64,000 nucleotides of DNA, taken from the NCBI GenBank assembly GCA_024704765.1, contig JAKMXF010000066.1, positions 496,001 through 560,000 on the forward strand, written 5' to 3'. Within the stretch, counting starts at the first letter, position 1, and the number at the start of each line of letters is the position of its first letter. Below the pieces are notes generated by a model that searched no databases, was not told where the DNA came from, and was given only the letters and a program-made list of their open reading frames with translations. The translations under genes were made by a program, and so were the position numbers. Shown here in pieces: positions 154-13,788 of the stretch. The DNA is from Oopsacas minuta (taxonomy: Eukaryota > Animalia > Porifera).

Positions 154-3100
154 ATGTCTAGAATATTCCTGTGTGGCTCTCGTTCAGTAGGAAAGACAAC
201 TCTATGTAAAGATTGGTGTGAATGGAATAAAGAATATGTTCATATTAATGGAAATGACGTCACTAGTGAAGTAATGGATGCAAATAATATTAGTCGTGAT
301 GATATTATTAATTCTTTGAATACAGAAGCTAAAGAGTTATATTACAATCTACAGAAGTATCTTTTTATTGAGCAAAACAAGAGAGAAGAATTGCTAAGTG
401 ATCGATTGTTCATATCTGATAGCGGACCAGATCCTCTTATTTATACTCACAAAGAAAGTAAGGATATGTCTTATAAATTGTATAAGCATGAAGATGTTAC
501 GAATTGCTTCAATCTCTACCGCAAGAGTTTAATAGTTGTAGTAGCTCCTTTAGAAGATGACAGAGAACATAATTCTTATACAAAGGTATTGAGACATGTA
601 TTACAAGAGTGTGGTGTACCTTATATGTACCTGAGAGAGAGGGTTAGATCAAAAAGATTAGAAATACTTAAGATAGCAGCTATTAATGGGTGTGTCCTTA
701 TGCCATTGGATCAGTTAAAAGAACAGCAGTGTCTTGCTTACTACATGGACATAGGAACTGTGAAAAATCGCATATTTTGCTCTCCAATGTCTCTGCAAGA
801 TAATACAGCCTATATTCGTAAATTCATAATATATCCATATGAAATACAATTATCTATTCAATCAATGGACAGTACTAATCGTATGCTAGAGAGATATGGT
901 ATAGGTAATTTTGTATTACTTGAATTCCACTGGAAAGTTAGTGATAATGACATTAAAGATATTCTGGGTATAGGACTATATGTAGATGGTGATGAATACC
1001 AGTTTATAGGTTGTAGCTCAGAGGAATTGAGGAGTAGGACTTGTTACCTTATGAAGGGAGATACTAATTACATTGATGCTGTATTGAGTGAGTGTGGAGA
1101 TTTTTCTGGGGTAAACACGGTTGCTGAGAGGTTGAATAGGATAGGATACCTATTCTCAAAAGGTATAAATACAGGTGTAGCTATTAGCAATGACGAGTTT
1201 GAGGTTATTGAAGATGTCTCAAATGCTGGAAGGATATTCACTGATGGTTGTGGATTAATTGGATTGAATTTAGCTAAGAAATTGGCTATAGGTTCTAATG
1301 TGGGTATAAACTCTCCAGATGATAATATTCCAGGTGTTTTTCAGATCAGATTCCAAGGGTACCAATGTGTTGTTATGAAGGCCCCAAAAGAAAACCAAGA
1401 TTCTTTTCAGTTAAGAAATTCTATGTTGAAATATAATACTGGAACAAAGCCTTTTCCACATATCTGGATCTGCAACCATTCTCGTCCTAATTCATACGGC
1501 AATCTAAACAAACAGTTTATTATGTTACTATCTGGACGAGGGATAAGTGACAAAGTTTTCCTTACAAAACAAGATAGTTATTTCACTGCATTAGAGAATA
1601 TGTTAATCGATCCTAAATTCGCTATTAAACTTCTTAACTGGAAAAACTACACAGAACTAGCCGAAACAGTAGCTGCCTGTCCTTCTACCGAGGATATGCA
1701 ACAGAACAAAGAAATACAAAACAAACTCAAATACCTCAAAAATACACTTGTAGAGAGAATTGACGAATTAGAAATTCCAGTTATTAACTCGCGATATATG
1801 TTTGGTGTCTGTGATCCTAATCAGCTGTTAGAATACGGAGAATGTTTCGTTAGATACACATTGAATGATGAACTAAAAACACTACAGGCAGGAACTTCTG
1901 TGATTGTTGGGAAGAATCCTTGTTATCATCTCGAAGATATTAGAGTTTTAATCACAGTAGATTATCCTGAATTGAATCATTTAGTTGATTGTATTGTATT
2001 TCCTGTAAAAGGTGAGAGACCCCATACATCTGAGATTGCTGGTTCTAGTCTAGGTGAGGACCGGTATTTTGTGTGTTGGGACGATAATCTGATCCCTAAA
2101 GATGTACCAAAACCTTATAAATACCTTGAAATAGAACCTGATCGAGCTCAAAACATATCTCGTGAAAATATCATCGAGTTCTTCGCTGGTTGTATGAATA
2201 ATATGGATATGATTAATTCATATTATCAATATTGGGCAGATAAACTAGGAGCAGGTTGTAGAGCTTGTAGAGATCTGGCTCAGCTGTTATCCAGAGGTGT
2301 AGCTTCTACAACAACAGTTGATAAGTTACCATGTGATCCCAAACCTCACAGAAATAAAAATCTCACATCACACGGTGAAATGGTTTGGCATAAGATGAAG
2401 ATAATAGCTCGTAGTAAAAGGAAGACGTTTACACTAGATACCATTGAAGATGCTCTGGTTAATACATGTTATGTCTCCTCTATTCCAGAAGACTTTATGA
2501 TAAGAATATTGAAGGATAAAGATAGGAGTATTCCTGAATACAAAATACTAATTACCTTATACAAATGGTGTAGGAGACTCAAATTAACTGACATTGAGAT
2601 AATTGATAAATTCATTGAGCTGTCCAGCTTTATAAACTTCGGTATTCTAACACTGAATGAGAGGATTGAAGCTATTAACCATGGCATACCAACTACTCAT
2701 GTAATGAACGCGTTATACAAGTCTAGAATACTCACTACAAAGATGTTACAGTCTCTGAAATTACCTTGTTATGGATGGGAATATTGCTTCAGAGAGAAGA
2801 GTAGTGATTTTGCCTGGAGCGATTTGTCTACTGCTATTACTAGTTTTACTGAATCTTTTATTATTCTTCAACTTGAAGAGTACATTTTAGCTTTCCATAT
2901 TATTGGTACGATTCGACTAGGGGACTCTGTGTTACCGCCTGGAAGCCTGACGTCATATTTATTCTCTGGGGGACAAATGTTCAGATACGTAACAGAATGT
3001 CATTATAATATTAATTTAGCTACAGAAGTAATACAATTTTATATCGAACATAAAGAGAATACATTTCTGTTTATGAAAAGATTCGGCAGAAGTTCTAAGA

Positions 3101-6100
3101 ATGATTTTGAAGGTGTCAAATATGATATTATTAGTATTGAGTTGGATAAATTCAAAACTGAATCCTCTGGAAATTCCAAACATCCTCTAATACGGAAAAA
3201 GAACTTCCAAATGATTGAGGTATTCGTTAAGAATAAATTCCAGCAGGAGATCAGCTGCTCTTTAGATGCCAATTCCCATCCGACAGAGAACGAGCTGGAG
3301 GATCTGCTGAGTGAAGATAAAGACTGTTTCATTGAACTACAAACTCTACCTGATTCACCGTTATTAGCTATGAAGGAATTTGCTTGTAAAGGAGATGGTA
3401 TAGGATTCTCTGGAGTACTACAACATATCAATGTATCTTCTATTAATAGTGTTATATTAATAGAACAATTCCTTATTCTTCTGTCAAATGTTATTGCTAA
3501 AATAGCACATAAATGTAGTTCGGAGTTACATACACAAGCATTGGAAGTCTATTGTAATCCTGGAGATCAAACTATTGAGCAAGAATGTTCGGAATTGCCA
3601 ACACCATCAAGTATCTTCGAAATAGCTAGTACAGTTGATAATCAAGTTATTCATACGATAGGAGATAGCTATCATGATACAAATCCATTCGTTCATGAAG
3701 TAGAGCAGTACACACATGATAAGAAGTATAGTAGTAGAAATAGCGTAAGATTAACGGTACCATTAATAGAGGAAAATGGATCAGATCTAGACGCACAACC
3801 AATGGAGGCTAAGAAATTATCTACAGAGTCACTTATACAGGAAACTGGACCAGAAGAACAAGTATCATCATTGGATAAGTTCAGTGAATCTTTATTAGAA
3901 CCTGTAGCTGAAACACAAACAATTCGTAATGGTACTCAATCATCAGGTCTTGTTGTAAAGGAAGTTAGGTCAGAGATACTAATAGAAATCTCTGATACAG
4001 AAAAAGCACTGGCTACTCCATTTGCCAAGGGAGATCAATCCGAAACACAAACAACTTGCAATGACATCCAATCCTCTAATACTGTTATACAGGAAAATAA
4101 ACCAGCATTACTAATAGAATTGTCTGATACAGAAATTACACCAGATAATACATTTGTACAATCAGATCAACCAAAAATTCAATCAATTTGTAGTGGCGGA
4201 CAACCGTCAGAACCTGTTCTGAAAAATCCACCAAAAATACTTATAGAATTATCAGACACAAAAATTACCGCGGAAGATTTATATATCCAAGCAGCTCAAT
4301 CAGAAACACGAGCAATTTGTAATGATATCCATATCCAATCGTCAGAGCATGTTCTCCAGGAAAATATACCTGACTTACTAATTGAATTATCAGAAACAGA
4401 AATTACACCAGATAATACATTAGTACAGTCAGATCAACCAGAAATTCAATCAATTTGTTGTGAAGAACAACCGTCAGAGCCTGTTCTGGAAAATAAACAA
4501 GAAATACATATGAAATTCTCAGATACGAAAATTACCGCGGATAATTCATATATACAGGCAGATCAATCCGAAACAAAACCAATTTGTAGTGATATCCATA
4601 TCCAATCGTCAGAGCATGTTATACAGGAAAATACACCTTTGTTGCTAATAGATACGTCAGTTTCAGAAATTACACAAGATAATCCAATTATCAACGCTGA
4701 TGAACTAGAAATTCAAGAAACAATACAATCAATGGCAGTGATAGATGATCAACTTGTTAAAGCGACTGAATTACGAGATACATTCAAATCCTTGGAAGAG
4801 ATATTGAATTCTCCTCATATAGAAATAACACAAGCAAGAGATATACTGCTTCTCTACAGTAGTCTCAGCAAATTACATCTTTATGACGTCATCAAACAGC
4901 ATCTTTGCAAGTCAATCGATACAATTGAGATTCCAACAATAGCTCAGTATCTTGACTGTATTTCTAATTGGGAGTTGTGGACATTCCTTCCACTGTCAGT
5001 ATCCAGTCAGCTGTCTAATCAGCTGTTTAAGTTATCTCTTAATCTTGACACTATACATACACCGGATCCTGAACATTTTGATGAAAAAGCTCCGAGTATT
5101 CAGGATTTGTGTATGAAAAGTGGAGTACCTTCATTTGATCAAAACATACTGAATTATTACAGATGTTATTTCTCTCATTTAATACTAAACTCTCTTCTAA
5201 ACGAGTCTATTGTAGAAGAAATGATTGAGAATTCTGATACTACATTGTGTATGTGGAGGATGGTTTATTGTCAAGAAGAAGAACGCCTGGATGATGATGC
5301 TACTGCTAATCCATGTGAAATTAAGAAAAAATGTAAGGCATGCTTCTCTCCAACAAGCAAGATTATGACAGATAAATTCACATTAGGTTCTTATGTCAAA
5401 ATCAGCTTTGTAGCTAGATCTACATCTTCTAACTCGAGTATGCCAATTGCACTAGGCTACATATCAACAGTATCAAATATTCTAGGTCGTATTACAGTAG
5501 AAATATTGGATCCTGTCCCTGATTGCCTAAAGAGAGCAGGTCGACTTGAGGTAGGCATATGGACTCTCACCTTGCTAGACAACATTACTACATTCAAGAA
5601 TTGTACCAAAGCTCTACATAGCTTACACGAGAGTAAGATTATTTCTATATTAATACATCCTAAAGGGTTCCCTCCTCTTCTAGAGATAGCACAAGAACAC
5701 AATTTAGACTATACATCTAAACAATCTCTACCTCCAGAAGAGATAGAAAATGTTTCGCATCCTTATGATGTATTCCCTAACTGTCAGGGTTGTAATAATA
5801 GGATTAGCTTCAATGAGAGACAGGAAAATGCCATCATCTCCGCTCTCGGAGACTCCCTTACTCTGATACAGGGTCTGCCTGGTACTGGTAAGACTGTAGT
5901 AGCAGCAGAGATTGTACATCAGTTACGTCATCTGATTAGACTTAAAGATAGATGTGATACTGCTAAAATGCTAGTTACAGGTGTTACTAATATCACTGTG
6001 GATAATCTCACATATAAACTGTTGGATTTAGGGATGCTAGTGTTGCGTATTGGGGAGACTACCAAAGACCTACGTGAATACTCCTTAGAATATCAGCTGC

Positions 6101-7071
6101 AAATGAAAGGGATAGAACTACAAGAAAATGGAGAGTTTAAAGAAGAAGAAATAATCAATAAAATATTAAAATCAGCTGATATAATCGCTACAACATGTTC
6201 AAGAACAGGAGATAATATTCTGAAGAATATAACATTCCCTTATATACTAATCGACGATGCTACTCAAGTGATAGAACCTATATCATTAATTCCTATAGTC
6301 AAATCTTGTGAGAGGCTTATTCTCATAGGAGACCCACAACAACTAGTACCCAAGTTACCATATGAACCAGAGGGTGTGATTCCTCTAAATGCACTTCGTG
6401 TTACTCTATTCCACAGGTTACATGCTCAAATGGAGCCTCTTTCGCTAGTTGAACAGTATCGTATGCATCCTGCTATAGCTGAATTTCCTTCTAGATTATT
6501 CTATTCTGGGAGATTGAGAACAGCAGTCAGCTGTTTGAATAGAACACCGCCTAATGTTAGGTTCCTCACTAAAGACAGACCTGTTACATTCTGTAATGTA
6601 GAATCAAGAGAAGAGGAAGCTGGAAGTTCTTGGAAGAATACAGGAGAAGCTAATAAAGTTGTAGAGATTATTAAAGAACTGATAGCTACTACAGAATACA
6701 AAGTATCTGATATTGGAGTAATTACACTGTATGTCGGACAAGTTAAATGCATTAAAGATACGCTAGGTAGGATACAAGTAGATGTAGATACTATAGACAG
6801 CTATAGAGGCAGGGAGAAGGAAGTAATTGTATTCAGCACTGTTCGGAACACAAAACACGGAGATATTAGTCTTATAGAAGATTTAAATACAATAAATGTG
6901 TTGTTAACAAGAGGAAGGCGAGCAATAATCGGAGTTGGTAACCCTATGACTCTGTCTAGATCTCATATCTGGAATGAATGGTACTATTTCTATTTTGAAG
7001 GAGACAATGAAGACGATAAACCGCCGCATGATGACGTCACTGAGGCTTCAGATTGGGCATGGGATGCTTGA
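154..7071 (+). CDS. Intronless multidomain protein: N-terminal P-loop (AAA_28/NadR-Ttd14-like) + cellular two-barrel RNA-dependent RNA polymerase domain (catalytically degenerate) + repeat linker + Upf1/DNA2-NAM7-like SF1 helicase
   Basis: ORF 142..7071 with first ATG at 154. P-loop is GSRSVGKTT. RdRP motifs are FTDGCG, FQIRF, KNPCYH and RPH..EIAGSSLGEDRYFVCWD. Helicase motifs are QGLPGTGKT (5869-5895), ILIDDATQ, GDPQQL, QYRMHP, DSYRGREKE and NVLLTRGR. Confidence 0.9.
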   Translation: MSRIFLCGSRSVGKTTLCKDWCEWNKEYVHINGNDVTSEVMDANNISRDDIINSLNTEAKELYYNLQKYLFIEQNKREELLSDRLFISDSGPDPLIYTHKESKDMSYKLYKHEDVTNCFNLYRKSLIVVVAPLEDDREHNSYTKVLRHVLQECGVPYMYLRERVRSKRLEILKIAAINGCVLMPLDQLKEQQCLAYYMDIGTVKNRIFCSPMSLQDNTAYIRKFIIYPYEIQLSIQSMDSTNRMLERYGIGNFVLLEFHWKVSDNDIKDILGIGLYVDGDEYQFIGCSSEELRSRTCYLMKGDTNYIDAVLSECGDFSGVNTVAERLNRIGYLFSKGINTGVAISNDEFEVIEDVSNAGRIFTDGCGLIGLNLAKKLAIGSNVGINSPDDNIPGVFQIRFQGYQCVVMKAPKENQDSFQLRNSMLKYNTGTKPFPHIWICNHSRPNSYGNLNKQFIMLLSGRGISDKVFLTKQDSYFTALENMLIDPKFAIKLLNWKNYTELAETVAACPSTEDMQQNKEIQNKLKYLKNTLVERIDELEIPVINSRYMFGVCDPNQLLEYGECFVRYTLNDELKTLQAGTSVIVGKNPCYHLEDIRVLITVDYPELNHLVDCIVFPVKGERPHTSEIAGSSLGEDRYFVCWDDNLIPKDVPKPYKYLEIEPDRAQNISRENIIEFFAGCMNNMDMINSYYQYWADKLGAGCRACRDLAQLLSRGVASTTTVDKLPCDPKPHRNKNLTSHGEMVWHKMKIIARSKRKTFTLDTIEDALVNTCYVSSIPEDFMIRILKDKDRSIPEYKILITLYKWCRRLKLTDIEIIDKFIELSSFINFGILTLNERIEAINHGIPTTHVMNALYKSRILTTKMLQSLKLPCYGWEYCFREKSSDFAWSDLSTAITSFTESFIILQLEEYILAFHIIGTIRLGDSVLPPGSLTSYLFSGGQMFRYVTECHYNINLATEVIQFYIEHKENTFLFMKRFGRSSKNDFEGVKYDIISIELDKFKTESSGNSKHPLIRKKNFQMIEVFVKNKFQQEISCSLDANSHPTENELEDLLSEDKDCFIELQTLPDSPLLAMKEFACKGDGIGFSGVLQHINVSSINSVILIEQFLILLSNVIAKIAHKCSSELHTQALEVYCNPGDQTIEQECSELPTPSSIFEIASTVDNQVIHTIGDSYHDTNPFVHEVEQYTHDKKYSSRNSVRLTVPLIEENGSDLDAQPMEAKKLSTESLIQETGPEEQVSSLDKFSESLLEPVAETQTIRNGTQSSGLVVKEVRSEILIEISDTEKALATPFAKGDQSETQTTCNDIQSSNTVIQENKPALLIELSDTEITPDNTFVQSDQPKIQSICSGGQPSEPVLKNPPKILIELSDTKITAEDLYIQAAQSETRAICNDIHIQSSEHVLQENIPDLLIELSETEITPDNTLVQSDQPEIQSICCEEQPSEPVLENKQEIHMKFSDTKITADNSYIQADQSETKPICSDIHIQSSEHVIQENTPLLLIDTSVSEITQDNPIINADELEIQETIQSMAVIDDQLVKATELRDTFKSLEEILNSPHIEITQARDILLLYSSLSKLHLYDVIKQHLCKSIDTIEIPTIAQYLDCISNWELWTFLPLSVSSQLSNQLFKLSLNLDTIHTPDPEHFDEKAPSIQDLCMKSGVPSFDQNILNYYRCYFSHLILNSLLNESIVEEMIENSDTTLCMWRMVYCQEEERLDDDATANPCEIKKKCKACFSPTSKIMTDKFTLGSYVKISFVARSTSSNSSMPIALGYISTVSNILGRITVEILDPVPDCLKRAGRLEVGIWTLTLLDNITTFKNCTKALHSLHESKIISILIHPKGFPPLLEIAQEHNLDYTSKQSLPPEEIENVSHPYDVFPNCQGCNNRISFNERQENAIISALGDSLTLIQGLPGTGKTVVAAEIVHQLRHLIRLKDRCDTAKMLVTGVTNITVDNLTYKLLDLGMLVLRIGETTKDLREYSLEYQLQMKGIELQENGEFKEEEIINKILKSADIIATTCSRTGDNILKNITFPYILIDDATQVIEPISLIPIVKSCERLILIGDPQQLVPKLPYEPEGVIPLNALRVTLFHRLHAQMEPLSLVEQYRMHPAIAEFPSRLFYSGRLRTAVSCLNRTPPNVRFLTKDRPVTFCNVESREEEAGSSWKNTGEANKVVEIIKELIATTEYKVSDIGVITLYVGQVKCIKDTLGRIQVDVDTIDSYRGREKEVIVFSTVRNTKHGDISLIEDLNTINVLLTRGRRAIIGVGNPMTLSRSHIWNEWYYFYFEGDNEDDKPPHDDVTEASDWAWDA
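3976..4682 (+). repeat. Coding tandem repeat of 43-46 aa units organised as an 89-aa (267-bp) higher-order dimer
   Basis: Units start LLIE(L/I)SDT; e.g. ttactaatagaattgtctgatacag at 4108 recurs at 4375 (period 267). Unit lengths are 44, 43, 46, 43, 46 plus a partial unit. Confidence 0.85.
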
Positions 7072-11978: not shown

Positions 11979-13788
11979 TCAAACTACGTTTAGTTTGGTT
12001 ACAATACACACTCTTACTGACTGATCAAACGAGGGACACACGAACAATCCTTCCTATAGAATACAGAATAGAAATGCAAAATAATTTTGTTTGTAGCACA
12101 ACTTATAAATGTTGTTTACCTTGTCATTATTCCAGTCCAATGTCGATATAGGTTGATCTGACAGATGTATATTCTGTAGAGCAGTCACACTACCCATTAC
12201 ACCTTCCTCTGTTTCATCCTCGTTCTTCTTAAACCGTTTAGGTGGATAGTTGCTACAATTTGTAATAATTCATTAGGTATTTAAGAGAGTGCTATCAATT
12301 AACTCACTATTTCCAAATGTTAACTGTCCCATTTCCGCCAGTGGTAGCGAATATATCTCTGTTCTGAGGGAGATGTTTCACGCTCCAGATTGTAGACTCA
12401 TGTGCCTAGATTAAATTGCTCATAATCACTGTAAAATTTTACTGCAAAATAACTGTACAATCAACTTCCGTTATATCGAAGCTTAGTGGACCGCGATAAA
12501 TACTTCGATATATCCGTGTTAGATATAACGTGAGTTAACTGTATTTCCTTACCTTTTCAACAAGAGATGCGAATCCTTTGGCCTCGTTAAAAGTGCGTAA
12601 ATCATAAATATGATATTTCCCCTCTAGTGTGACTGCTACTAACTTATTCTTAATAATATCTGTTCTATCGAATTGTAAGCCACAAACCTAATTCATTAAA
12701 TGAAATAAAATCAGCTATTTCTAAACGGAAATTTGTTACGTCACTCACTCCATTTTTAAGATTATTCTCCCAGAATAAACTCAAATTTCTCAAATCAAAC
12801 ATCTTAACATCTCCGTTATCATATCCAGAACACACAAACCTTTCTTCATTGTTATGAGAATTCCCTACGAACATTTGAATTTAGTTTCATGAATACATAG
12901 TAATTATAATTATATTACCCATTGCAACAGCCCAGCAATCTCTTCTAGCCTCTCCTTTAGCAGGTTCCATGCAAGCTACCGGGTTATTCTTCTGTCTTAC
13001 GTCCCACACTTTCACTGATCCTATAAACACACGTTATTAACACAGTCTATTTCCATTATATCGAACACGGATATATGGAAATACCCGCTTATACCGAAGT
13101 CAAGTCTTAAATTGTACAAATATTATCCCAAACCTTCAAAGTAACATAATTTCATTGTTTATATCCCAATAATTATCGCGATCCCTTGAGCTTCGATGTA
13201 ACGGGAGTTGACTGACACAACTGCAGTGTTTATATTGTAAGCTAATTGGTACTCAAAATTATTCTTGAAATCAACATAGGTAGTATTTATTTATAACAAA
13301 CCGTCTCTACTCCCAGTCACTATCTCAGGTGCTCCATTCCCTATTCCCACTCCACCACATCCATCAATAGCATTGATTATCCCTTCATGAGCTTTCACAC
13401 TGTATACCGGATAATCTAACCTCTCTAGATCCCATGTAGCTAGTCTTCCATCAAAGTCTCCAGTAGCTAGATGTCTCTGGTGTAGAGAGCTAGCTCCAAA
13501 TGTCCCGCACTTGAATGAAGATTTCTTCTCTGTCTAGAAATAATATAAAAACACGAATCGTGACGTAATTCACGCTTAATAAATACATTATTATTGTATA
13601 CTTACTTGTACAATTAATTTTAACTCTCCCTTATTGACTTCATATATTTGAATTGCTCCCGTGCCTCGGGGATGAGAGCCCAATACAACACACTTAGCAC
13701 TTGATGGTATCCATTTGGTATCGTAGACAGTGAAGTTTAGACTCTTGTGGATGTGTACTATTATTTGCGGCTTTTCCCAGGTGGACAT
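11979..13788 (-). CDS. WDR92: WD repeat protein 92 / dynein axonemal assembly factor 10, 8 exons
   Basis: Exons reconstructed with GT-AG ends and consistent phase: 13788-13606, 13533-13302, 13020-12919, 12864-12749, 12687-12553, 12405-12308, 12252-12120, 12053-11979. Translation runs [50 protein letters not shown]. Confidence 0.93.
12458..12541. mobile_element. MITE family A in WDR92 intron
   Basis: ta|caatcaacttccgttatatcgaag ... gatataacgtgagttaactg|ta. Confidence 0.8.
13043..13214. mobile_element. MITE family A (degenerate TSD) in WDR92 intron
   Basis: cagtctatttccattatatcgaac ... cttcgatgtaacgggagttgactg; internal sequence shared with copies at 22687 and 36503. Confidence 0.75.

What the first reader, a model, noticed from the sequence alone, without database searches (positions are those of the whole stretch)
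154..7071. One polypeptide joining a P-loop domain, a cellular RdRP and a Upf1/ZNFX1-type helicase (an RdRP complex in one gene)
Seen: a single intronless 2.3k-aa ORF carries, in order, an AAA_28-like P-loop, an RdRP (pfam05183-type motifs), a BACK-like helical segment (SIPEYKILITLYKW..INFGIL), a repeat linker and an SF1 helicase. Established: RdRPs work with separate Upf1-like helicases in S. pombe (Rdp1-Hrr1), plants (RDR6-SDE3) and C. elegans (EGO-1 with ZNFX-1), and animal RdRPs have a patchy distribution. Inference: this is a Rosetta-stone fusion for an animal small-RNA amplification or antiviral module, with a nucleotide-kinase-like N-domain of unknown role.
Basis: partly seen in the sequence, partly recalled or inferred. 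Interest (0 to 1): 0.8.

Follow-up and report, generated by a model that had tools for sequence, protein, structure and literature searches.

The report
Dead-polymerase RdRP–helicase fusion in glass sponge
This glass-sponge gene does join a kinase-like domain, an RNA-copying polymerase and an RNA helicase in one protein, but that design is old and widespread in eukaryotes, and this copy is a duplicate that has lost the polymerase's catalytic residues while still being kept by selection.

Summary
Window 154-7071 (+) is one uninterrupted 2305-codon ORF of Oopsacas minuta (JAKMXF010000066.1). In order it carries an AAA_28-type P-loop kinase fold, a cellular RdRP (PF05183, E 2e-92), a BACK-like helical segment, a tandem-repeat linker and a Upf1-like SF1 helicase. 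I add a TLDc-like domain after the BACK-like part.

The architecture is not a new animal Rosetta stone. About 200 collinear proteins exist, in sponges, molluscs, an acoel, amphioxus, a centipede, many fungi, a green alga, a diatom, a dinoflagellate and a diplonemid. RdRP and helicase trees recover the same groups, which points to one ancient fusion. One paper noted the amphioxus case in a figure legend. I found no functional study.

The window copy is the "B" paralogue, which is restricted to glass sponges. Its DxDGD triad reads SSLGED, whereas 127 of 133 fused relatives keep DxDGD. Its helicase Walker B is DD, not DE. Even so, B orthologues in four species are syntenic, full-length and under purifying selection (dN/dS 0.13-0.38). 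O. minuta also has an intact "A" copy.

My best reading, which is inferred, is a non-catalytic RNA-binding or regulatory partner, not an siRNA amplifier. No RNA data could be obtained. The scan flagged this same stretch twice before, and flagged a different RdRP fusion elsewhere in this genome.

The parts
154..7071 (+). Single intronless ORF of 2305 codons plus stop: the glass-sponge 'B' paralogue of the AAA_28-RdRP-BACK/TLDc-Upf1-like helicase family
   Evidence: Record JAKMXF010000066.1 about 496154-503071.
154..753 (+). N-terminal P-loop kinase-fold domain (AAA_28-like), aa 1-200. Walker A GSRSVGKT is intact. The family's Arg in ISDRGPD is Ser here, and the DDGxR loop segment is deleted.
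832..2301 (+). Cellular RdRP domain (PF05183), aa 227-716
   Evidence: E 2e-92; RDR2 7eu0, E 1e-45
2044..2061 (+). Degenerate catalytic loop SSLGED (aa 631-636) in place of (G/S)DxDGD. The first and second Asp are lost and the third (D636) is kept.
2380..2775 (+). BACK-like helical segment (aa ~743-874; range of the structural alignment)
   Evidence: (KLHL11 4ap2 Z 8.4)
2704..3243 (+). TLDc-like beta domain (aa ~851-1030; range of the structural alignment)
   Evidence: Foldseek E 1e-5, TMt up to 0.70; Z 11.6-14.4, rmsd 2.7-3.1 over 140-164 residues; (Pfam TLD weak in 10 of 60 relatives)
3286..3513 (+). Helical end of the conserved middle region (aa ~1045-1120)
4028..4716 (+). Tandem-repeat array inside the poorly conserved acidic linker (linker aa ~1121-1555). 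The expansion is specific to this species.
   Evidence: contig breaks at 4324-4620
4819..5793 (+). Conserved pre-helicase region (aa 1556-1880), probably the accessory/1B-type domain of Upf1-like helicases. This is a lead only.
   Evidence: no PDB sequence match
5809..6963 (+). Upf1-like SF1 helicase core (AAA_11 + AAA_12), aa 1886-2270
5872..5895 (+). Helicase Walker A GLPGTGKT (family consensus GPPGTGKT)
6253..6258 (+). Helicase Walker B DD (aa 2034-2035) in place of DE
   Evidence: 127 of 133 relatives have DE

Best explanation
Shown: this is a real, single-ORF nuclear gene of the glass sponge Oopsacas minuta. It belongs to an old, widespread and functionally uncharacterised eukaryotic family built as AAA_28 kinase-like P-loop (present in part of the family), cellular RdRP, BACK-like helices plus TLDc-like domain, linker, accessory region, and Upf1-like SF1 helicase. 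RdRP and helicase trees give the same groups, so the fusion arose once and was inherited as a unit. Glass sponges carry at least two paralogues. The 'A' copies (in O. minuta: P0195, annotated 'Regulator of nonsense transcripts 1') keep every catalytic motif. The window gene is the 'B' copy. All four known B orthologues have lost the first Asp of DxDGD, and each reads differently at the motif. The O. minuta copy has in addition lost the conserved Lys-Gly of the first barrel motif, the Walker B Glu and the motif V Gln of the helicase. B is nevertheless syntenic, full-length and under purifying selection in every domain, with about twice the dN/dS of A in the RdRP and helicase domains. Inferred: B no longer polymerises RNA. 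It survives as a pseudo-enzyme that still folds and probably still binds RNA and ATP. It most likely acts as a non-catalytic partner, clamp or regulator of the pathway run by the active A enzyme, for example by heterodimerising through the RdRP body (QDE-1 is a homodimer) or through the BACK/TLDc module. For the family as a whole, the likely logic is that a 5'-3' RNA helicase feeds or clears the template of a covalently attached RdRP.
For: Domains and order. Organism: plus JAKMXF named in PMC10280926. Family breadth: searches (exhaustive HMMER search; 1235 hits at E<=1e-30; at least 55 of the top 150 carry RdRP plus helicase; 199 proteins at E<=1e-20, the Pfam combination PF05183+PF13086+PF13087 on most rows listed), and for names. 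Single fusion: the helicase tree recovers the four RdRP-tree groups with Jaccard 1.0. Paralogy: P0003 (B) and P0005 (A) lie in one assembly. O. minuta has P0195 (A) and the window gene (B). B synteny is EST1-GLMP-gene-unknown-RING. Decay: SSLGED, PHYGGD, PHLDRD and PHSDGD against DxDGD in 127 of 133 fused proteins. At columns at least 90% conserved, the window protein changes 8 of 47 in the RdRP and 7 of 51 in the helicase; the intact control copies change 0-2 and 0-1. Selection: B orthologues have dN/dS 0.13 (P-loop), 0.24-0.30 (RdRP), 0.22-0.25 (Mid), 0.31-0.38 (pre-helicase) and 0.18-0.25 (helicase) at dS 0.35-0.65. A copies of the same two species have 0.14 (RdRP) and 0.12 (helicase). B has a long stem and tips. 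Precedent: Paramecium Rdr3 has a highly divergent catalytic domain yet is required for RNAi (PMC2896523).
Against: There is no transcript, protein or activity data. The only runs holding the locus behave like DNA. The third Asp, the one shown essential in QDE-1, RDR6 and Rdp1 (PMC2896523), is kept, and Glu635 lies next to it, so residual or altered metal binding cannot be excluded. Any A-B interaction is pure inference. dN/dS was computed pairwise with NG86, not with a branch model. The exact sister of B within glass sponges is unsure.
Confidence: 0.6

Rival explanations
1. One reading: an active single-chain RdRP-helicase that amplifies small RNAs or acts in antiviral RNAi in this animal.
For: The domain calls are all real. 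Separate RdRP-helicase pairs are established in RNAi (S. pombe, plants, C. elegans; from my own knowledge). Walker A of both P-loops, the helicase Arg of motif VI and the third catalytic Asp are retained.
Against: Two of the three catalytic Asp and the conserved Lys-Gly of the first barrel motif are lost. The motif differs in each of the four orthologues, which is the signature of a released constraint. Walker B reads DD. Amphioxus, with an intact family member, shows no RdRP-dependent small RNAs (PMC6396948).
Confidence: 0.08
2. A decaying pseudogene: the ORF is intact only by chance or because of its youth.
For: Catalytic residues are lost in all three modules. Branches are long. A lineage-specific repeat has expanded in the linker.
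Against: The frame is open for 2305 codons. Full-length syntenic orthologues exist in four species. dN/dS is 0.13-0.38 in every domain at unsaturated dS. 39 of 47 and 44 of 51 highly conserved columns are kept.
Confidence: 0.07
3. Neo-functionalised enzyme: the altered site (Glu635-Asp636, with His in the relatives) supports another reaction, such as nucleotidyl transfer or RNA-end chemistry, or the protein works mainly as an ATP-driven helicase using the dead RdRP as an RNA-binding platform.
For: The B orthologues P0002-P0004 keep canonical helicase motifs (GPPGTGKT or GPSGTGKT, DEATQ, FQG, TRA[KR]R). Purifying selection on the RdRP body persists. One or two acidic residues remain in the loop.
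Against: The loop differs in every orthologue, which does not fit a new fixed active site. The O. minuta copy also has a weakened helicase.
Confidence: 0.17
4. The ORF yields two or more separate products (internal promoter, internal start or proteolysis in the linker), so RdRP and helicase are not one working polypeptide.
For: There is a long, poorly conserved, repeat-bearing linker. In one sponge the A copy is called as two overlapping ORFs. The A. fumigatus reference annotation lists the helicase part alone.
Against: The frame is continuous in some 200 relatives across eukaryotes. The two domains have co-evolved strictly. The split in L009 is a 1-nt frame change inside a domain, not at a boundary.
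Confidence: 0.08

Closest known systems
Amphioxus RdRP BL02069 (Pinzon et al. 2019, PMC6396948); Branchiostoma belcheri XP_019625576 / KAI8492821
   Same: It has RdRP, the conserved middle region and a Upf1-like helicase (AAA_11/12) in one chain. It is the only literature mention of this architecture that I found.
   Different: Its DLDGD and helicase motifs are intact. No N-terminal AAA_28 domain was detected. It lies in the other major clade, with fungi. It is reported as transcribed, with no RdRP-dependent small RNAs detected.
O. minuta paralogue P0195 ('Regulator of nonsense transcripts 1 [Oopsacas minuta]', 2061 aa) and the other glass-sponge 'A' copies
   Same: Same genome, and the same five-module order including AAA_28.
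   Different: It keeps SDLDGD, GPPGTGKT, DEATQ and FQG. Its branch is short, and dN/dS in the RdRP and helicase is about half that of B.
Non-covalent RdRP-helicase complexes: S. pombe RDRC (Rdp1-Hrr1-Cid12), plant RDR6 with SDE3, C. elegans EGO-1 with ZNFX-1/DRH-3 (from my own knowledge, not tested here)
   Same: They pair a PF05183 polymerase with an RNA helicase.
   Different: The chains are separate. Hrr1, ZNFX-1 and SDE3 belong to other SF1 subfamilies, or to SF2 in the case of DRH-3. Those polymerases are catalytically active and make siRNA precursors.
Dicer/RIG-I-type helicase-RdRP fusions
   Same: One chain joins a helicase and a cellular RdRP.
   Different: There the helicase is SF2 and N-terminal. 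Here it is SF1 Upf1-like and C-terminal, with AAA_28 and BACK/TLDc modules.
Divergent-site RdRP paralogues: Paramecium Rdr3 (PMC2896523), Cryphonectria rdr4 (PMC4182546)
   Same: They are RdRP paralogues lacking a canonical DxDGD. Rdr3 is still genetically required for RNAi.
   Different: They are not helicase fusions. rdr4 is judged a pseudogene, whereas the sponge B copy is under purifying selection.
UPF1/NAM7
   Same: It is the best solved-structure match of the helicase core (E 1e-55).
   Different: The CH zinc-knuckle domain was not detected. The N-terminal context is entirely different, and Walker B is DD in the window copy.
TLDc proteins (NCOA7, OXR1/2, TBC1D24, mEAK7, Rtc5p; BTB-BACK-TLDc proteins; IFI44)
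   Same: The fold of aa ~851-1030 matches (Z up to 14.4). A BACK-like segment precedes it, as in BTB-BACK-TLDc proteins.
   Different: The window sequence has no significant Pfam TLD hit. The known TLDc proteins bind V-ATPase, and nothing here tests that.

Membership tests
Eukaryotic cellular RdRP (PF05183) | Pfam PF05183 match above the gathering score | tested here: met
   311 bits against a 23.8 cut-off, aa 227-716; RDR2 7eu0 at E 1e-45
Eukaryotic cellular RdRP (PF05183) | Catalytic DxDGD metal-binding triad | tested here: not met
   SSLGED aligns to GDLDGD of RDR2. 208 of 218 aligned RdRP domains and 127 of 133 fused ones have DxDGD.
Eukaryotic cellular RdRP (PF05183) | RNA-templated RNA synthesis | not testable with these tools
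   This needs a biochemical assay.
Upf1-like SF1B helicases (AAA_11/AAA_12) | Pfam AAA_11 and AAA_12 above the gathering score, with Upf1 as nearest structure | tested here: met
   126.9 and 162.5 bits against a cut-off of 27; NAM7/UPF1 at E 1e-55
Upf1-like SF1B helicases (AAA_11/AAA_12) | Walker A GxxGxGKT and the motif VI Arg | tested here: met
   GLPGTGKT and TRGRR
Upf1-like SF1B helicases (AAA_11/AAA_12) | Walker B DE (catalytic Glu) | tested here: not met
   DD at aa 2034-2035; DE in 127 of 133 relatives
UPF1 orthologue (NMD factor) | N-terminal CH (Cys/His-rich) domain | tested here: not met
   No such Pfam domain was found. The N-terminal 1880 aa are AAA_28, RdRP, BACK/TLDc and linker.
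ZNFX1/Hrr1/SAD-3-type helicases | NFX1-type zinc fingers, and ZNFX1 as the nearest helicase | tested here: not met
   No zinc-finger family appears in Pfam. ZNFX1 9q9z scores E 3e-31 against Upf1 at 1e-55. There is only a weak atlas lead to PF25396 (score 0.85).
AAA_28 (PF13521) P-loop kinase-like domain | Pfam match above the gathering score | tested here: inconclusive
   The window copy scores 24.8 bits against 27, but covers profile positions 1-160 of 164. 43 of 49 homologous N-domains match, best E 1e-20. The fold matches NadR, shikimate and adenylate kinases.
TLDc domain (PF07534) | TLDc fold or Pfam match | tested here: inconclusive
   The fold criterion is met: Z 11.6-14.4 to six TLDc structures and Foldseek prob 1.0. 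Pfam gives no hit for the window copy and weak hits in 10 of 60 relatives (best E 0.005).
Fused AAA_28-RdRP-BACK/TLDc-Upf1-like helicase family (unnamed) | Collinear full-length homology across all modules | tested here: met
   All five local HMMs hit in order in the window protein and in dozens of relatives.
Glass-sponge 'B' paralogue group | Monophyly, shared synteny and shared loss of the first catalytic Asp | tested here: met
   Support is 100% in three trees. Synteny is shown.

The most novel reading that the evidence does not exclude
Glass sponges keep a catalytically dead copy of a pan-eukaryotic, single-chain 'kinase-RdRP-TLDc-helicase' machine as a dedicated non-enzymatic subunit or regulator (RNA clamp, decoy or sensor) of the active copy. 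The family as a whole performs an RNA-copying function that is not classical siRNA amplification.
Probability: 0.3. Interest if true: 0.75.

Novelty: new variant of a known kind. Interest (0 to 1): 0.55.

Why it matters
What cellular RdRPs do in animals outside nematodes is an open question. Pinzon et al. 2019 found intact RdRP genes in amphioxus but no RdRP-made small RNAs. This work shows that one large branch of those RdRPs is permanently welded to a Upf1-like helicase, to a BACK/TLDc module and often to a kinase-like domain. It occurs from diplonemids and algae to fungi, molluscs and chordates, and nobody appears to have studied it. That gives concrete handles for study: helicase ATPase, TLDc partners, and fungal members that can be knocked out. 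The glass-sponge B copy is a natural experiment, because polymerase chemistry was given up while the protein was kept. That separates the scaffold or RNA-binding role of an RdRP from its catalytic role. For annotation, it shows that 'Regulator of nonsense transcripts 1' in O. minuta, and split helicase models in fungi, hide RdRP fusions.

Tried and rejected
Transcript test. The look-up of sequencing runs found four runs from one study, none on record as RNA. Their contigs run through the intergenic spacer into the neighbouring gene with near-uniform depth, and one run has a 107-kb contig, so they behave as DNA. There were no joints or indels. The single-transcript question stays open.

Sequence-profile searches of PDB with the middle, pre-helicase and P-loop regions gave nothing useful, so I folded two of them. 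There I have only weak atlas leads, with scores of 0.83-0.86.

Literature. I found no paper describing the fusion beyond the amphioxus figure legend.

I suspected that the fungal members are the RRP-3 lineage, or one of the A. fumigatus RrpA/RrpB genes. I could not verify this by accession, so I do not claim it.

Pinzon's placement of the Strigamia RdRP in their gamma group hints at the subfamily, but I did not test it.

I rejected the ZNFX1-type label, because there are no zinc fingers and Upf1 is the closer match. I rejected the pseudogene reading on dN/dS and synteny. I rejected a mobile-element or viral origin, because the gene is single-copy and syntenic and PF05183 is the cellular family.

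The 'DDGxR' loop of the P-loop domain is not a clean marker of decay, because several A copies, including P0195, also lack it.

One search failed because the protein exceeded the tool's length limit.
Full report
**1. What is in the sequence**

Window 142/154-7071 (+) is the only long ORF in that stretch. From the ATG at 154 it encodes 2305 residues, and the N-terminus MSRI(I/F)LCG is shared by all orthologues.

The contig is JAKMXF010000066.1 of assembly GCA_024704765.1. The accession prefix JAKMXF is given for Oopsacas minuta (Hexactinellida) in PMC10280926.

Domain calls:
- **RdRP.** Pfam gives PF05183 at aa 227-716 (E 2.2e-92).
- **Helicase.** Pfam gives AAA_11 and AAA_12 at aa ~1886-2263 (E 1.5e-36 and 1.2e-47). 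NCBIfam's best model is the IGHMBP2-family helicase. Among solved structures, the helicase core is closest to Upf1/NAM7 (E 1e-55), well ahead of DNA2, Sen1, ZNFX1 and IGHMBP2 (1e-30 to 1e-35).
- **N-terminal domain.** It is a P-loop kinase fold. AAA_28 scores 24.8 bits in the window copy, just below the cut-off of 27. AAA_28 matches 43 of 49 homologous N-domains, with a best E of 1e-20. An AF2 model (pLDDT 87) resembles shikimate kinase, the NadR ribosylnicotinamide-kinase domain and adenylate/thymidylate kinases.

**2. The middle region**

Profile searches of PDB sequences found nothing for aa 716-1110. An AF2 model built on 60 homologues (pLDDT 85) shows three parts: helices, then a beta domain, then helices.

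- **Beta domain (aa ~851-1030).** It matches six independent TLDc structures (NCOA7B, OXR2, mEAK7, Rtc5p, TBC1D24, Oxr1) at Z 11.6-14.4, with rmsd 2.7-3.1 Å over 140-164 residues. Foldseek gives E 1e-5, probability 1.0 and target TM up to 0.70. The ESM-atlas shape search returns TLDc clusters, including BACK+TLDc, BTB+BACK+TLDc and IFI44. Pfam TLD is weakly detectable in 10 of 60 relatives.
- **Preceding helices (aa ~743-874).** They align to the BACK region of KLHL11 at Z 8.4, which stands above the other helical matches at 6.3 or less.
- **Linker.** It holds a tandem array at nt 4028-4716, with period 267 x 2.6 or 129 x 3.8. The array is absent from the orthologues, and short-read contigs break there.
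- **Conserved region before the helicase (aa 1556-1880).** It has no sequence match in PDB. There are only weak feature-based leads to the 1B/ZNFX1/DUF6469 accessory domains of Upf1-like helicases.

**3. The architecture is old and common**

A word-index search with the whole protein found six collinear relatives of 2069-2165 aa.

An exhaustive HMMER search with a profile of aa 1-1110 found 1235 proteins at E<=1e-30. Local HMMs of the five modules show that at least 55 of the best 150 representatives carry RdRP, the middle region and the helicase in one chain. About 30 of those also carry the P-loop domain.

A profile word search returned 199 proteins at E<=1e-20, and most rows listed carry PF05183+PF13086+PF13087.

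Named members:
- **Sponges:** O. minuta itself (P0195, 2061 aa, annotated 'Regulator of nonsense transcripts 1'), Dysidea avara, Ephydatia muelleri.
- **Other animals:** Dreissena polymorpha, Patella caerulea, Symsagittifera roscoffensis, Branchiostoma belcheri, Strigamia maritima.
- **Fungi:** many Ascomycota (Trichoderma reesei, Aspergillus fumigatus, Podospora and others), Glomeromycota, a basidiomycete and a chytrid.
- **Algae and protists:** Edaphochlamys debaryana, the diatom Amphora, the dinoflagellate Effrenium and the diplonemid Rhynchopus.

Separate trees of the RdRP and helicase domains of 127 fused proteins recover identical groups (Jaccard 1.0). The groups are the B clade, a 17-row glass-sponge clade, an 84-row sponge clade and a 28-row clade of amphioxus, fungi and Strigamia. 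This supports one ancient fusion inherited as a unit.

In the literature I found only one mention. The legend of Fig 1B of Pinzon et al. 2019 notes that the amphioxus RdRP BL02069 'also possesses AAA_12'. The same paper detected no RdRP-dependent small RNAs in amphioxus (PMC6396948). Other searches found no description of the fusion.

**4. The window copy is a decayed paralogue**

Aligned to Arabidopsis RDR2 (7eu0), the catalytic GDLDGD corresponds to SSLGED.

| Gene | Source | Catalytic loop |
|---|---|---|
| Window (B) | O. minuta | SSLGED |
| P0002 (B) | BUSC20 sponge metagenome | PHYGGD |
| P0003 (B) | unnamed ENA assembly ERZ25071281 | PHLDRD |
| P0004 (B) | unnamed ENA assembly ERZ25069837 | PHSDGD |
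| 127 of 133 fused proteins | across eukaryotes | DxDGD |

The remaining exceptions among the 133 are P0024, an independently decayed glass-sponge-clade copy, and one row that is an alignment gap.

I counted changes at columns that are at least 90% conserved across the family.

| Domain | Conserved columns | Window | P0002-4 | Intact control copies |
|---|---|---|---|---|
| RdRP | 47 | 8 | 10-11 | 0-2 |
| Helicase | 51 | 7 | 3-4 | 0-1 |

- The window's RdRP changes include K404Q and G405C in the first-barrel KG motif, G594E, D632S, D634G and G635E.
- Its helicase changes include P1908L in Walker A, E2035D in Walker B and Q2218R in motif V.
- In the P-loop domain, the Arg of ISDRGPD is Ser in all B copies and a DDGxR loop is deleted. 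That loop is also degenerate in several A copies, including P0195, so it is a weaker argument.

**5. It is nevertheless maintained**

The B genes share their neighbours, in the order EST1, GLMP, gene, a ~330-aa unknown on the minus strand, then a RING protein. The window's neighbours are 42% and 65% identical to those of L002.

One unnamed ENA assembly carries both a B copy (P0003) and an intact A copy (P0005), at similar coverage. O. minuta likewise has both B (the window gene) and A (P0195).

Pairwise NG86 dN/dS, with B compared among P0002/3/4 at dS 0.35-0.65 and A compared across the same species pair:

| Domain | B copies | A copies |
|---|---|---|
| P-loop | 0.13 | 0.14 |
| RdRP | 0.24-0.30 | 0.14 |
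| Middle region | 0.22-0.25 | 0.19 |
| Pre-helicase | 0.31-0.38 | 0.22 |
| Helicase | 0.18-0.25 | 0.12 |

B is therefore constrained everywhere, but about two-fold relaxed exactly in the two enzymatic cores.

In an IQ-TREE analysis (25 rows, 1741 columns), B nests inside the glass-sponge clade with 100% support. Its stem is 0.41 and the window tip is 0.41, against 0.03-0.27 for A tips. Its exact sister is unsure.

**6. How it probably works**

Shown: the domain order, the loss of catalytic residues, purifying selection and the coexistence with an intact paralogue.

Inferred: B cannot polymerise RNA. It is kept for a structural, RNA-binding or regulatory role in the pathway of the A enzyme. In most species its helicase may still be active, because P0002-4 keep the DE of Walker B. 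In O. minuta the helicase is probably a slow or non-hydrolysing ATP-dependent RNA clamp.

A functional divergent-site RdRP has a precedent in Paramecium Rdr3 (PMC2896523). An RdRP lacking DxDGD and judged a pseudogene is Cryphonectria rdr4 (PMC4182546).

For the family as a whole, a covalently attached 5'-3' helicase would clear or feed the template of the RdRP. The roles of the kinase-like and TLDc modules are unknown.

**7. What could not be done**

No RNA evidence was available. I therefore cannot confirm that one transcript spans the gene. The support for a single gene is indirect: an unbroken frame in about 200 relatives and strict co-evolution of the domains.

**8. Verdict**

The Rosetta-stone idea is valid as a statement about the family, but three qualifications apply:
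- The family is neither animal-specific nor newly seen.
- This gene is its catalytically decayed, selectively retained glass-sponge paralogue.
- siRNA amplification is unlikely for this copy.

Earlier notes of this scan on the same stretch (s1-226679, s1-257339) agree with what I tested. A different RdRP fusion, with a Dicer-type helicase, was noted elsewhere in this genome (s1-201549); I did not test it.

Noticed in passing
L009:12440-12560 (also L010 and L011): The clade-A copy in the 'BUSC20' sponge metagenomes is called as two overlapping ORFs of 1507 and 613 aa. Homology to P0005 jumps from frame 3 to frame 2 at about nt 12467, inside the pre-helicase domain, and the junction is identical in three assemblies from two samples. 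The downstream helicase still shows dN/dS 0.12, so this may be an assembly error, a very recent lesion or recoding.
   Followed up: partly
P0024 (ENA contig of 2.47 Mb; glass-sponge clade): This is a second, independent decayed paralogue. It reads SDLAGD in the polymerase and GYPGSGKT, DDATL and TRAQL in the helicase, on a long branch (0.76). Loss of catalysis has therefore happened at least twice in this clade.
   Followed up: partly
P0295 (EDP48578.1, A. fumigatus A1163) against P0255/P0282: A 648-aa 'RNA/DNA helicase, putative' of the reference strain sits in the same 90% cluster as the 1655-1687-aa fused RdRP-helicase proteins of other A. fumigatus strains. Reference gene models may split the fusion, which would hide it from RNAi studies.
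   Followed up: no
P0274 (Strigamia maritima T1IXA6, 4256 aa): A merged gene model named 'Large ribosomal subunit protein mL46' contains the RdRP and helicase modules. In the RdRP tree it groups with fungal sequences. An origin by transfer from a fungus was proposed earlier and is disputed by Pinzon et al. 2019.
   Followed up: partly
window:7303-8427 (-): This is a 374-aa ORF with no Pfam family. It lies convergent to the RdRP gene with a 231-bp spacer, and it is conserved in position and sequence (42% identity) in other glass sponges.
   Followed up: partly
window:3990: A C>T difference at a third codon position appears in three of the four DNA runs of the same sample. It is probably allelic.
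   Followed up: no
window:4324-4620: Short-read contigs of all four runs break here, at the repeat units of the linker array. The repeat number in the assembly is therefore the least certain part of the ORF.
   Followed up: no
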